Assembly (NCBI RefSeq): GCF_011386835.1
Contig: NC_088797.1
Location: 34,162,001 to 34,226,000, forward strand
DNA: 64,000 bases
Source: Chrysemys picta bellii
Lineage: Eukaryota
Direction of reading: 5' to 3'
A program made the position numbers and the translations under genes. Position 1 is the first letter of the stretch, and the number at the start of each line of letters is the position of its first letter. The notes below the pieces were generated by a model, which saw nothing but the letters and a program-made list of their open reading frames with translations, did not search any database and had not been told where the DNA came from. This document shows, piece after piece, positions 25,263 through 27,026 of this stretch.

Positions 25263-27026
25263 ATGGCGCTGTACCTGCTGGCCCAGCGTGCCCATGCCCG
25301 CCGGCGGCGGCGGGTGCCCCAGGAGCGGGTGTTCAAGCCCCGGATCCAGTTCCTGAACATGCCAGAGGAGCAGGTGATGCGGCGCTACCAGCTCAACCCT
25401 GAGATGATCCGAGACCTGTGCCACGCACTAGAGTGTGACCTGCAGCCCTCGACTGGCCGCAGCCATGCTCTCCCTGTTTATGTCAAGGTGACGGCTGCCC
25501 TCAACTTCTACACCTCAGGCACATTTCAGACGCCGGCGGGCGACGCAGCTGGCATCAGCCAGGCCAGCATGTCCCGCTGCGTCTCCCAAGTCACGACCGC
25601 CCTGACCCGCCGTGCCAACGCCTACATCCGCTTCCCCTTCCAGCCTCGGCAACAGGCCCGCACCAAAGAAGAGTTCCTGCGCATTGCTGGCTTCCCTAAC
25701 GTGCTGGGCACGCTGGGCTGCACCCACGTGGCCCTCAAGCCGCCCTCGGATCATGAGAACCTCTACCGCAATCCACTGCGCTTCCACTCCATGAACATGC
25801 AGCTGGTGTGCAATGCCCACGGCATGATAACCCATGTGGTGGCCGAGTTCCCTGGCTCTGTGCCGGATGCCCACATCCTCAGCTGTTCCAGCCTCAGGGG
25901 CATCTTTGAGGGGCACCAGAACCTGGATGGCTGGCTGCTGGGTGAGCCATGGCCTAGGGGCCCCTCCGTCAGTTGCCCCACCTGCCAATCTCATGCACCT
26001 GTGGCACCCCTTACTTGGCTGTCCTCACTCTCCAGTGTCTCCACTGTCCACCACAGAAGTAGGACTCTTATCTCAGCAGAGTAACCTGGATCCCACTCCT
26101 AGCCCATCACAGCAGCCCTGCCTGCACGTAGGAGCGAGGGAAGAAATCAAGGCTCCCTGCACCAGCCATAAACCACAGGCCAAGCTCCAGTGGTGAGATT
26201 GCTCAGGGTGGTTTGAACACAGGTTGTGTGGTGAAGGCTCCATGACAGCTGCTGGTCACCTGCATCCTCCACCCCAGCCTGAATTCCCTGCTATGTGCAG
26301 GGGGCCCTGAGGGAGTGCCCACCCACCTACCAGATTCTGCTAGCTGCCTCAGCCTGCCCTGCCCCTCCCATAGGGGAGTGGGGTACACTGTGTCTTGATA
26401 GGCCCTTCCTCCCTCTTGGAGCATCATGGACACTTGCAACTTCCAAGCTGCCCAAGAGAGGGAAGGGCCCCCATTATTCCACTCCCCTGAGCCTGTCAGG
26501 GCCCCTGCCCAGAGCCTGATTGGAGTTGGCATCCTATAGAGGGGAGAGGCCCCATCTTAAAGCCTGGAGACTGCCATGGGGATGGGTGGAAGGCCAGGGA
26601 CAGCCAGCGAGTCAACCTGCATAGCATAACCCCTGTGTCTGGTTCTCCACAGCGGATGGCACCTACCCCCTGAAGCCCTGGCTGCTGACACCTGTGGAGG
26701 CAGCAGAGACAGCAGCTGAGCAGCGATACAATGCAGCGCACATGGCCACGCAGGCTGTGGTGGGACGTACAGTGGGGGCACTAAAAGGCCGGTTCCGGTG
26801 CCTGGACCAGGCAGGGGGGGTGCTCCAGTACAGCCCCCTCAAGGTCTGCCACATCTTTGTGGCTTGCTGTGTCCTGCACAACATGGCTGTGGGGCGGGGC
26901 ATTGCCATGCCTGAGGGGGTGGAGCTGGGTGCCAGGCTACCTGATCAGGCTTCTCCCCACCCTGAGCCCCTCTCCCAGGAGGCCCAGTGCCTGCGGCAAG
27001 AGCTCATCACCAGCTACTTCAGCTGA
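25263..27026 (+). CDS. HARBI1-like Harbinger (PIF) transposase-derived protein, 2 coding exons, 350 aa, DDE triad degenerate
   Basis: Exons 25263-25941 and 26653-27026 (G|gtgag ... cacag|CG). Motifs [65 protein letters not shown]. Open frame, good start context (cccATGG). No symbol given because it is probably not the HARBI1 orthologue. Confidence 0.92.

What the first reader, a model, noticed from the sequence alone, without database searches (positions are those of the whole stretch)
25263..27026. Intact HARBI1-like gene with two DDE residues changed to Gly, between TUT1 and MTA2: candidate domesticated, nuclease-dead Harbinger transposase
Seen in sequence: a clean 350-aa two-exon ORF with Harbinger transposase motifs. 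The first catalytic Asp motif (GxxDCTH) reads GTLGCTH (GGC at 25716-25718). The catalytic Glu motif (ERTxG) reads VGRTVG (GGA at 26763-26765). Each is one A-to-G change from GAC or GAA. The middle Asp (LLADG, D228) and GSVPD are kept, and there is an Arg-rich N-terminus (RRRRR, possible NLS). I found no TIRs, TSD or partner Myb/SANT ORF. Established: human HARBI1 keeps DDE and lies next to ATG13, not in the TUT1-MTA2 interval. Plant Harbinger-derived proteins (ALP1, HDP1) act in chromatin complexes rather than in transposition. Inference: this is a separate domestication or paralogue, absent from this position in human, working as a non-catalytic scaffold or chromatin factor.
Basis: partly seen in the sequence, partly recalled or inferred. 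Interest (0 to 1): 0.82.

Follow-up and report, generated by a model that had tools for sequence, protein, structure and literature searches.

The report
Old nuclease-dead Harbinger gene, not HARBI1
This turtle gene is an ancient transposase tamed by its host: it is expressed, has been kept at one chromosomal position since before tetrapods arose, has lost its DNA-cutting residues, is separate from HARBI1 (the only gene of this kind my literature searches found for vertebrates), and has no mammalian match.

Summary
A two-exon, 350-aa DDE_Tnp_4 (Harbinger) gene lies at 25263-27026. The first catalytic Asp is Gly (GGC 25716-25718) and the catalytic Glu is Gly (GGA 26763-26765). RNA contigs from four studies carry the predicted 25941/26653 splice.

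The protein is identical to the Chrysemys picta model that NCBI names 'putative nuclease HARBI1', but it is not HARBI1. True HARBI1 forms its own clade, which includes a coelacanth copy. Forcing the two groups together is rejected (AU p = 0.005).

I call this gene 'A'. It has orthologues in turtles, caecilians, frogs and coelacanth. It sits between TUT1 and MTA2 in a sea turtle and a caecilian. One more caecilian shows the TUT1 side and a frog shows the MTA2 side. Turtle dN/dS is 0.12-0.14, and as low as 0.009 in the N-terminal HTH part. All tetrapod copies lack at least two triad residues, with different replacements; the coelacanth copy reads D-D-D.

I also found a second dead relative, 'B', next to CCS in coelacanth, lungfish, a caecilian, turtles and birds.

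The function is inferred: a non-catalytic DNA- or partner-binding adaptor. I found no paper describing A or B. I class it as a new member of a known kind. An earlier scan note (s1-318383) flags what is probably this turtle's B gene, 361 kb upstream.

The parts
24400..25000 (.). CpG-island promoter region between the TUT1-like gene (minus strand) and this gene (plus strand)
   Evidence: CpG o/e is 0.81-1.01 here, against 0.07-0.30 in the flanking non-coding DNA. The first exon of the TUT1-like gene lies at about 24603-24701(-). RNA contigs of this gene start at 24865-24972.
24865..25262 (+). 5' UTR (approximate start)
   Evidence: RNA contigs X9, X5 and X12 begin at 24865, 24959 and 24972. The Pelodiscus mRNA contig has a 306-nt 5' UTR.
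25263..25941 (+). Coding exon 1 (aa 1-226 plus the first base of codon 227)
   Evidence: Pfam DDE_Tnp_4 matches aa 152-212.
25347..25625 (+). N-terminal helix-turn-helix domain (aa 29-121), the most constrained part of the protein
   Evidence: 79% of columns 29-112 are invariant in 12 tetrapod sequences. dN/dS is 0.009-0.14. The model is helical here and resembles sigma-factor region 4 and other HTH folds at Z 5-5.7.
25716..25718 (+). Codon GGC = Gly152 at the place of the first catalytic Asp
   Evidence: It lies on predicted strand 147-158.
25942..26652 (+). Phase-1 intron (711 nt, GT..AG) inside the codon just before the second catalytic Asp
   Evidence: The splice is seen in 4 runs. The same intron position and phase occur in Caretta, Pelobates, bird gene B, pig HARBI1 and a sterlet Harbinger transposon.
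26653..27026 (+). Coding exon 2 (aa 227-350 and the TGA stop)
   Evidence: Pfam DDE_Tnp_4 matches at 2e-13.
26655..26657 (+). Codon GAT = Asp228, the retained second catalytic Asp
   Evidence: Frogs have Gly here.
26763..26765 (+). Codon GGA = Gly264 at the place of the catalytic Glu
   Evidence: It lies on predicted helix 247-273.
27027..27563 (+). 3' UTR (approximate end)
   Evidence: RNA contigs of X1 and X5 run to 27563.
19576..24701 (-). Neighbouring TUT1-like gene, head to head with this gene (approximate span)
   Evidence: A PAP_assoc ORF lies at 19576-20703(-). The region is collinear with the Caretta gene that carries zf-met, RRM, MTPAP-like and PAP_assoc domains. A CT..AC joint at 24035/24603 marks an intron on the minus strand.
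27795..35728 (-). Neighbouring MTA2-like gene, tail to tail with this gene (only the part that could be mapped)
   Evidence: The region is collinear with the Caretta gene that carries BAH, ELM2, SANT, GATA and MTA_R1 domains. Deep RNA contigs begin at 27795.

Best explanation
This is a single-copy host gene descended from a Harbinger (PIF/Harbinger, DDE_Tnp_4) transposase. I call it 'A'. It was fixed between TUT1 and MTA2 no later than the last common ancestor of amphibians and amniotes. A coelacanth orthologue shows that the gene itself predates the coelacanth-tetrapod split.

It is not HARBI1, and it is not a post-domestication duplicate of HARBI1. It keeps the two-domain build of the transposase: an N-terminal HTH and an RNase H-like core. 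In every tetrapod copy it has lost at least two of the three metal-binding residues, so it cannot cut DNA by the DDE mechanism. It is transcribed from a CpG-island promoter region shared head to head with TUT1. It is spliced as predicted and is under strong purifying selection.

Inferred, not shown: it acts as a non-catalytic nuclear adaptor. The basic stretch and the almost frozen HTH domain would bind DNA, a Myb/SANT-like partner (NAIF1 or an MSANTD protein), or both. The dead core would serve as a structural or oligomerisation platform. Plant ALP1/ALP2 and HDP1/HDP2 work this way.
For: Identity and anatomy:
- Pfam DDE_Tnp_4 matches both exons.
- The AlphaFold model has pLDDT 89 and pTM 0.87. 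It shows an HTH at aa 35-121 and a core at aa 127-312. The three triad positions sit on strand 1, after strand 4 and on the long helix, as in DDE enzymes.
- The best structural matches are piggyBac (Z 10.0), Tn5 (9.4), Tn4430 (8.2) and ISCth4 (8.0) transposases, then retroviral integrases at about 7.

Loss of catalysis:
- The triad reads G/D/G in turtles (S/D/G in Pelodiscus), G/D/T and G/D/K in caecilians, and G/G/S or G/G/A in frogs.
- It reads D/D/D in the coelacanth.
- All 12 fish and coelacanth proteins used for comparison read D/D/E. Only one of them, the sterlet element, was shown to sit in a transposon.

Host gene rather than transposon:
- The order TUT1-like(-) / gene(+) / MTA(-) is seen in Caretta and Microcaecilia. 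The TUT1-like side is seen in Rhinatrema and the MTA side in Pelobates.
- There are no TIRs.
- Each turtle species has one 350-aa model (358 aa in Natator), across five turtle families.

Selection:
- dN/dS is 0.12-0.14, Fisher p <= 2.6e-10. By region it is 0.009-0.14 for the N-terminus plus HTH, 0.10-0.15 for the core and 0.3-0.6 for the C-terminal tail.
- Against Caretta, the exons are 94-96% identical with no indels. The intron is 91% identical and the upstream DNA 83%.

Expression:
- Spliced contigs occur in 4 runs from 4 studies.
- Pelodiscus RNA contigs carry the uninterrupted CDS.

Not HARBI1:
- The HARBI1 clade has 100/100 support and contains teleost, coelacanth, lungfish, axolotl and mammal sequences. 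The A clade has 99/98 support and sits elsewhere.
- The AU test rejects A plus HARBI1 as one clade (p = 0.005).
- The coelacanth has both genes.

Partner idea:
- In Ping, NAIF1, HDP2 and ALP2, the C-terminal part of the Myb-like protein binds the nuclease. For Ping, the N-terminal half of the nuclease is enough for binding (PMC7282668).
- The N-terminal half is the most conserved part of A.
Against: - No function was measured.
- The predicted-complex test with a sturgeon transposon Myb-like protein gave no verdict.
- No Myb-like gene is linked to the locus.
- The coelacanth copy still has three acidic residues (D-D-D), so early members may have been active.
- The relation of A to B and to the nearest DDE-intact proteins is an unresolved polytomy. 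I cannot tell one domestication followed by duplication from two domestications.
- Absence from mammals, squamates, crocodilians, salamanders and birds rests only on the lack of hits in protein collections. I did not search genomic DNA.
- The coelacanth orthologue's position in its genome could not be read.
Confidence: 0.8

Rival explanations
1. It is the turtle's true HARBI1 orthologue, as the NCBI name says, moved to a new locus and mutated.
For: NCBI and UniRef name all members 'putative nuclease HARBI1'. The length is similar (350 against 349 aa). It shares the C-terminal motif R-x-x-L-x-x-x-x-F-S and the same phase-1 intron as pig HARBI1.
Against: It is 42% identical to pig HARBI1 and 45% identical to a sterlet transposon's transposase. 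The HARBI1 clade (100/100) has its own coelacanth, lungfish and axolotl members, while A has a separate coelacanth member. The AU test gives p = 0.005 against joining the two. The shared intron is also present in the sterlet transposon, so it comes from the transposon lineage.
Confidence: 0.02
2. It is a decaying or recently immobilised Harbinger transposon copy, an ORF that is open by chance or still young, and not a host gene.
For: The same genome holds intact-looking Harbinger transposons, according to earlier scan notes that I did not check. The catalytic residues are mutated, as in dead copies.
Against: The position and exon structure are the same in turtles, caecilians and frogs. dN/dS is 0.12-0.14 with no indels in the exons. 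There are no TIRs. It has a CpG-island promoter and spliced mRNA in four studies.
Confidence: 0.01
3. It arose by duplication of an already domesticated gene (HARBI1, or the common ancestor of A and B), not by a separate capture of a transposon.
For: A and B lie on the same chromosome in Mauremys and Rhinatrema, judged by equal contig lengths. An unchecked scan note places a similar gene 361 kb from this window. A plus B as one clade is not rejected: the AU test of A with the bird B sequences gives p = 0.46. All share the same intron.
Against: For HARBI1 as the parent, the AU test rejects it (p = 0.005). For a common A/B ancestor, the tree neither joins nor separates them (open polytomy with a sterlet transposon and a sturgeon/shark clade). 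The first Asp is still present in coelacanth A and in lungfish B, so the Gly is not a shared inherited mark.
Confidence: 0.35
4. The protein is still a nuclease that uses other acidic residues, or a one-metal mechanism.
For: The core is still under purifying selection (dN/dS 0.10-0.15). Asp228 is kept in turtles and caecilians.
Against: The first Asp is Gly in every tetrapod copy examined except Pelodiscus, which has Ser. The Glu position holds G, T, K, S or A in different lineages, which shows no constraint for an acid. Frogs have lost all three residues.
Confidence: 0.04

Closest known systems
HARBI1 (harbinger transposase derived 1), vertebrates
   Same: It is a single-copy host gene derived from a Harbinger transposase and about 350 aa long. 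It has the same HTH plus DDE_Tnp_4 build and the same phase-1 intron before the second Asp. It has a similar C-terminal helix.
   Different: It belongs to a different clade (AU p = 0.005) and sits at a different locus, TUT1-MTA2. HARBI1 keeps D-D-E in mammals, axolotl and coelacanth, while A has lost it. HARBI1's clade here spans teleosts to mammals. A was found only in coelacanth, caecilians, frogs and turtles.
Arabidopsis ALP1 and HDP1 (Harbinger transposase-derived chromatin factors)
   Same: They are domesticated Harbinger nucleases. ALP1 has lost two of the three DDE residues and works through a Myb-like partner (ALP2) inside a chromatin complex (PMC7282668). This is the closest analogue for how A may work.
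   Different: They are independent domestications in plants. For A, no partner and no complex have been shown.
Gene 'B' (this report): dead Harbinger-derived gene next to CCS in coelacanth, lungfish, a caecilian, turtles and birds
   Same: B is 45-50% identical to A in the same species, with the same build and intron. It is also catalytically dead and lies on the same chromosome.
   Different: B forms its own clade that follows the species tree (99/86). It sits at the RBM4-like/CCS locus. Birds keep B but no A was found in them. No B was found in frogs.
Sterlet Harbinger transposon (transposase P0043 with a Myb_DNA-bind_5 gene tail to tail, L008)
   Same: It is the top-scoring hit in the representative library, 49% identical to the Caretta orthologue used as query and 45% identical to the window protein. 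It has an intact triad and the same intron position and phase.
   Different: It reads D-D-E and carries the second, Myb-like gene typical of the mobile element. A has neither.
Drosophila DPLG genes (domesticated PIF-like genes; PMC9710019)
   Same: They show recurrent domestication of PIF/Harbinger transposases into host genes, some together with the Myb-like partner.
   Different: They are independent events in insects. I took this only from the title and abstract listed.

Membership tests
PIF/Harbinger transposase superfamily (by descent) | DDE_Tnp_4 (PF13359) domain | tested here: met
   Both exons match above the curated cut-off (40 and 50.7 bits against 24.8).
PIF/Harbinger transposase superfamily (by descent) | RNase H-like catalytic fold preceded by an HTH domain | tested here: met
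   The AF2 model has pLDDT 89. VIA-align gives piggyBac Z 10.0, Tn5 9.4 and integrases about 7. The HTH resembles sigma-factor region 4 at Z 5-5.7. No Harbinger structure is solved: Foldseek against the PDB found nothing below 1e-3 and the PDB sequence search found nothing.
Active Harbinger transposon | Intact D-D-E triad | tested here: not met
   The window reads G152 / D228 / G264. All tetrapod orthologues lack at least two of the three residues.
Active Harbinger transposon | Terminal inverted repeats and a 3-bp target-site duplication | tested here: not met
   Only short, low-complexity inverted pairs occur in 24300-28400.
Active Harbinger transposon | Adjacent Myb-like second gene | tested here: not met
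   The gene is flanked directly by the TUT1-like and MTA2-like genes. The 3' ends of the gene and of the MTA2-like gene are about 230 nt apart. The sterlet element, by contrast, has the Myb gene.
Active Harbinger transposon | Multiple dispersed copies | tested here: inconclusive
   There is one model per species in the protein collection and a conserved locus. I could not search the whole genome.
HARBI1 orthologue group | Groups with HARBI1 of other vertebrates in a tree | tested here: not met
   The two clades are separate. The AU test rejects the union at p = 0.005.
HARBI1 orthologue group | Conserved D-D-E triad | tested here: not met
   Pig, axolotl and coelacanth HARBI1 read D-D-E. A does not.
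HARBI1 orthologue group | Position next to ATG13 | not tested
I did not check it with the tools. The window gene lies between the TUT1-like and MTA2-like genes.
Domesticated transposase gene (general criteria) | Orthologues at one syntenic position in distant species | tested here: met
   Both flanks are seen in Caretta and Microcaecilia, one flank each in Rhinatrema and Pelobates.
Domesticated transposase gene (general criteria) | Purifying selection on the coding sequence | tested here: met
   NG86 dN/dS is 0.12-0.14 with Fisher p <= 2.6e-10.
Domesticated transposase gene (general criteria) | Transcribed and correctly spliced | tested here: met
   Spliced contigs occur in four runs from four studies. 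Pelodiscus mRNA contigs carry the whole CDS.
ALP1/HDP1-type non-catalytic chromatin adaptor (works like, not descent) | Direct binding to a Myb-like, transposon-derived partner | tested here: inconclusive
   Complex prediction with the C-terminal part of the sterlet Myb-like protein scored 0.02, which is no verdict. The true candidates (turtle NAIF1 and MSANTD1-4) could not be fetched with the tools left.
ALP1/HDP1-type non-catalytic chromatin adaptor (works like, not descent) | Membership of a chromatin-modifying complex | not testable with these tools
   This needs IP-MS or co-IP.

The most novel reading that the evidence does not exclude
A and its relative B are the missing transposase-side partners of the vertebrate Myb-like, Harbinger-derived genes. 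One Harbinger element, or two sister elements, would have been captured in the sarcopterygian ancestor together with MSANTD3, the one Myb-like derivative reported as sarcopterygian-only (PMC9392472). The result would be a nuclease-dead transposase-Myb chromatin module like plant ALP1-ALP2. Mammals would later have lost the transposase half while keeping the Myb half.
Probability: 0.15. Interest if true: 0.75.

Novelty: new member of a known kind. Interest (0 to 1): 0.58.

Why it matters
In the papers I could search, vertebrates have five or more host genes derived from the Myb-like gene of Harbinger transposons: NAIF1 and MSANTD1-4. Only one gene derived from the transposase is described, HARBI1 (PMC9392472).

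This locus, and the related gene B, show at least two more transposase-derived genes. Both date back at least to the common ancestor of coelacanths and tetrapods. Both are catalytically dead and were kept for hundreds of millions of years in some lineages. Neither has a mammalian match in the protein searches.

- They give a vertebrate counterpart to the plant nuclease-dead Harbinger adaptors.
- They give a natural experiment in loss of the DDE triad. The coelacanth copy reads D-D-D and tetrapod copies are dead by different routes.
- They correct a misleading database name. 'Putative nuclease HARBI1' is applied to three different genes.
- Xenopus has A, so the function can be tested directly.

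Tried and rejected
- Complex prediction of A with the C-terminal 231 aa of the sterlet transposon's Myb-like protein scored 0.02. That is no verdict and counts neither for nor against binding.
- Foldseek against the PDB found nothing below E = 1e-3. The PDB sequence search found no hit. No Harbinger transposase structure exists to compare with.
- I first hoped that intron position would tell gene duplication from separate domestication. I dropped this: the same phase-1 intron is in pig HARBI1, A, B and a mobile sterlet element.
- I first took the bird 'HARBI1-like' proteins for fast-evolving orthologues of A. I rejected this. They lie next to CCS, have their own turtle, caecilian, lungfish and coelacanth orthologues, and turtles plus birds as one clade is rejected (p = 0.014).
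- The coelacanth A locus could not be fetched. Against the frog, dS is saturated.
- The bacterial promoter/terminator scan has no bearing on a vertebrate gene.
- Sinzelle et al. 2008 is not held in the library. What I say about it comes from PMC9392472 and PMC7282668.
- The teleost gene nxhl/zgc:113227 (PMC8558974) is a DDE_Tnp_4 gene that its authors treat as a HARBI1 homologue. I could not place it in my trees. No ray-finned fish protein came closer than 49% to A.
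Full report
**1. The observation.**
ATG is at 25263. Exon 1 ends at 25941 and is followed by GT. An AG at 26651-2 precedes exon 2, which runs 26653-27026 and ends in TGA. 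The spliced CDS is 1053 nt and encodes 350 aa.

GTLGCTH carries GGC at 25716-25718 (G152). LLADG carries D228. VVGRTVG carries GGA at 26763-26765 (G264). Both exons match Pfam DDE_Tnp_4 above the curated threshold. A search for inverted repeats around the gene gave only short, low-complexity pairs.

**2. It is a real, expressed gene.**
I laid Logan contigs of four runs from four studies of this organism on 24000-28400. Each run has a contig that joins 25940/1 to 26652/3 with GT..AG and skips 711 nt. Two of these contigs, 1520 and 1148 nt long, cover exon 1 and exon 2 across the splice.

The contigs start at 24865-24972 and run to about 27563. That gives a 5' UTR of 300-400 nt and a 3' UTR of about 540 nt. 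In the softshell turtle Pelodiscus, two RNA-run contigs carry the uninterrupted 1053-nt CDS.

On the minus strand, a CT..AC joint at 24035/24603 marks an intron, probably the first, of the TUT1-like gene. The exon beside it, at about 24603-24701, lies about 170-370 nt from the starts of this gene's contigs. The interval 24400-25000 is a CpG island with o/e 0.8-1.0. The two genes therefore appear to share a bidirectional promoter region. Deep contigs of the MTA2-like gene begin at 27795, so the two 3' ends are about 230 nt apart.

**3. Neighbours and species.**
The protein is 100% identical to XP_005289335.1 of Chrysemys picta bellii, which NCBI names 'putative nuclease HARBI1'. The window is collinear at about 87% identity with a Caretta locus. 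The called genes there are:
- a 772-aa protein with zf-met, RRM, MTPAP-like and PAP_assoc domains (TUT1-like, minus strand);
- the 350-aa gene (plus strand);
- a 670-aa protein with BAH, ELM2, SANT, GATA and MTA_R1 domains (MTA2-like, minus strand).

A PAP_assoc ORF at 19576-20703(-) confirms the TUT1-like gene in the window.

**4. Orthologues and synteny.**
Proteins 57-98% identical to the window protein exist in several groups:
- five turtle families (Cheloniidae, Trionychidae, Geoemydidae, Testudinidae, Emydidae);
- caecilians (70-71%);
- frogs (58-62%);
- the coelacanth (57%).

The arrangement TUT1-like(-) / gene(+) / MTA(-) recurs in the caecilian Microcaecilia. The TUT1-like gene sits head to head with it in Rhinatrema. 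MTA sits tail to tail with it in the frog Pelobates. The locus has therefore been fixed since at least the amphibian-amniote ancestor. The coelacanth locus could not be fetched.

**5. Selection.**
Nei-Gojobori dN/dS among three turtles is 0.12-0.14, with dS 0.13-0.42 and Fisher p <= 2.6e-10. By region the values are:
- N-terminus plus HTH (aa 1-112): 0.009, 0.04 and 0.14;
- DDE core: 0.10-0.15;
- C-terminal tail: 0.3-0.6.

Across 12 tetrapod sequences, 79% of columns 29-112 are invariant. The figure is 42% for the core and 4% for the tail. One 30-aa block, [30 protein letters not shown], is nearly unchanged across tetrapods. It differs at only one position in the frogs examined, with one further change in Rhinophrynus.

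Against Caretta, the exons are 94-96% identical without indels. The intron is 91% identical and the upstream DNA 83%, both with many gaps.

**6. Catalytic residues.**

| Group | Asp 1 | Asp 2 | Glu |
|---|---|---|---|
| Turtles | G (S in Pelodiscus) | D | G |
| Caecilians | G | D | T or K |
| Frogs | G | G | S or A |
| Coelacanth A | D | D | D |
| 12 fish and coelacanth comparison proteins | D | D | E |
| Pig, axolotl and coelacanth HARBI1 | D | D | E |

Gly at the first Asp is thus conserved across tetrapods. The Glu position drifts freely, which is the pattern expected once catalysis has been abandoned.

**7. Fold.**
An AlphaFold2 model built on a 70-sequence alignment has pLDDT 89 and pTM 0.87. 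It shows a helical N-terminal domain (about aa 35-121), a mixed alpha/beta core (127-312) and a C-terminal helix (335-349).

The three triad positions fall on the first strand (147-158), just after the fourth strand (224-226) and on the long helix (247-273). That is the canonical DDE layout.

VIA-align against 48,161 PDB representatives gives:
- piggyBac Z 10.0, Tn5 9.4, Tn4430 8.2 and ISCth4 8.0;
- retroviral integrases at about 7;
- for the N-terminal domain, sigma-factor region 4 and other HTH folds at Z 5-5.7.

These Z values show the fold class only. No Harbinger structure is solved.

**8. It is not HARBI1.**
In a careful ML tree, and again with more taxa, true HARBI1 forms a 100/100 clade. 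That clade contains teleost, coelacanth, lungfish, axolotl and mammal sequences; the mammalian cluster has 318 members. The A clade, coelacanth plus tetrapods, has 99/98 support and lies elsewhere. Proteins with an intact triad lie between the two clades.

Forcing A and HARBI1 into one clade costs 36.6 log-likelihood units (AU p = 0.005). The top-scoring hit in the representative library, a sterlet protein with an intact triad, sits in a classic Harbinger element with a Myb_DNA-bind_5 gene tail to tail. It is 49% identical to the Caretta query and 45% identical to the window protein.

The phase-1 intron inside the Gly codon of WLLG|D is shared by A, pig HARBI1, bird B and this sterlet element. 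The intron is therefore older than the domestications. It does not tell duplication from independent capture.

**9. A second dead relative, 'B'.**
Bird proteins about 50% identical to A lie between an RBM4-like gene and CCS, not between TUT1 and MTA2. A search with one of them found orthologues in several groups:
- all major bird groups;
- turtles (Mauremys, 75% identical to the bird protein);
- the caecilian Rhinatrema;
- the lungfish;
- the coelacanth.

In the tree they form a clade that follows the species tree (99/86). Turtles plus birds as one clade is rejected (p = 0.014).

In Mauremys, B lies between an RRM gene and CCS, and a spliced RNA contig exists for it. In Mauremys and in Rhinatrema, A and B sit on contigs of identical length, so presumably on the same chromosome. 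It is probably this turtle's B, but I could not read that DNA.

B is dead everywhere, by different routes:

| Species group | Asp 1 | Asp 2 | Glu |
|---|---|---|---|
| Turtle | G | D | K |
| Birds | G | D | R |
| Caecilian | G | D | Q |
| Lungfish | D | N | K |
| Coelacanth | G | N | E |

A, B, a sturgeon/shark clade and the sterlet element form an unresolved polytomy. The AU test of A with the bird B sequences as one clade does not reject it (p = 0.46).

**10. How it most likely works.**

Shown here:
- It is a transposase-derived protein with the fold intact and the triad gone.
- Its strongest constraint is on the basic N-terminus and the HTH domain.
- The core is still constrained and the tail is free.
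- It is transcribed from a CpG-island promoter region.

From the literature: in Harbinger systems the C-terminal part of the Myb-like protein binds the nuclease. This was found for Ping, NAIF1, HDP2 and ALP2. For Ping, the N-terminal half of the nuclease is sufficient. ALP1, a dead plant nuclease, is brought to PRC2 by its Myb-like partner (PMC7282668). The Myb-like protein also imports the transposase into the nucleus by binding its N-terminal end (PMC9392472).

Inferred: A is a non-catalytic nuclear adaptor. Its HTH and N-terminus bind DNA, a Myb/SANT-like partner, or both. I put about 0.5 on this mechanism and about 0.9 on the identity as an old, dead, domesticated gene. The single complex prediction I could run gave no verdict.

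**11. Novelty.**
Four full-text searches found no paper on a second or third vertebrate gene derived from a Harbinger transposase. A 2022 study lists HARBI1 as the only one, beside five Myb-like derivatives. It notes that MSANTD3 is restricted to sarcopterygians, which is about the same range as A and B.

The gene models exist in NCBI under the name of HARBI1. The gene is therefore annotated but, in the literature I could search, not recognised for what it is. This is a new member, or rather two new members, of a known kind. It is a solid result for the field of transposon domestication, but it is not a new principle.

Noticed in passing
L003:10001-11956 (Poecile); L009 and L010:10001-11754 (Mauremys); L011:463-1569 (RNA contig): A second catalytically dead Harbinger-derived gene ('B') lies between an RBM4-like gene and CCS. 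It is conserved in coelacanth, lungfish, a caecilian, turtles and all major bird groups, and is 45-50% identical to A. It too is named 'putative nuclease HARBI1', 'ALPL protein' or a CCS isoform in databases.
   Followed up: partly
protein alignments: The first catalytic Asp has become Gly repeatedly and independently. This is seen in tetrapod A, coelacanth B, tetrapod B, a ray protein (P0053), sturgeon proteins (P0062, P0050) and the lungfish member of the true HARBI1 clade (P0254, which reads G-S-E). D-to-G looks like a favoured route to inactivation.
   Followed up: no
L007:2670/10881 (pig HARBI1); L008:6697/6785 (sterlet transposon); window 25941/26653: One phase-1 intron, inside the Gly codon just before the second catalytic Asp, is shared by a mobile Harbinger element and three different host genes. 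It is therefore an old feature of this transposon lineage.
   Followed up: yes
L004:10001-11134 (Rhincodon): Sharks have an intronless Harbinger-derived gene that reads D-D-K and is more than 90% conserved among five shark species. It lies next to a GPCR gene and may be another domestication. Squamates have a SCAN-domain fusion (P0252, P0253).
   Followed up: no
window 11398-14125 (+): Long ORFs with a reverse transcriptase (RVT_1) and a weak GIY-YIG match lie in an AT-richer stretch. This is the domain pair of a Penelope-like retroelement.
   Followed up: no
window 24603-25941: One RNA contig (X1, 1369 nt) runs from the first exon of the TUT1-like gene straight into exon 1 of this gene. The divergent transcripts may overlap, or the promoter region may be transcribed throughout.
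   Followed up: no
window 26191/26652: A minor alternative donor at 26191 appears in one run only. It would keep 250 nt of intron with an in-frame stop at 26082-26084. Unspliced contigs at lower depth are also present.
   Followed up: no
P0004, P0005, P0006, P0040 (tortoises, Emys): NCBI's isoform X2 (298 aa) drops 52 residues of the HTH domain. No contig in the four runs laid here shows such a joint.
   Followed up: partly
window 7884-8549 (-) and 49417-50529 (-): A weak TAF6 C-terminal match (below Pfam's cut-off) and EML beta-propeller/WD40 matches suggest a TAF6L-like gene upstream and an EML3-like gene downstream of MTA2.
   Followed up: no
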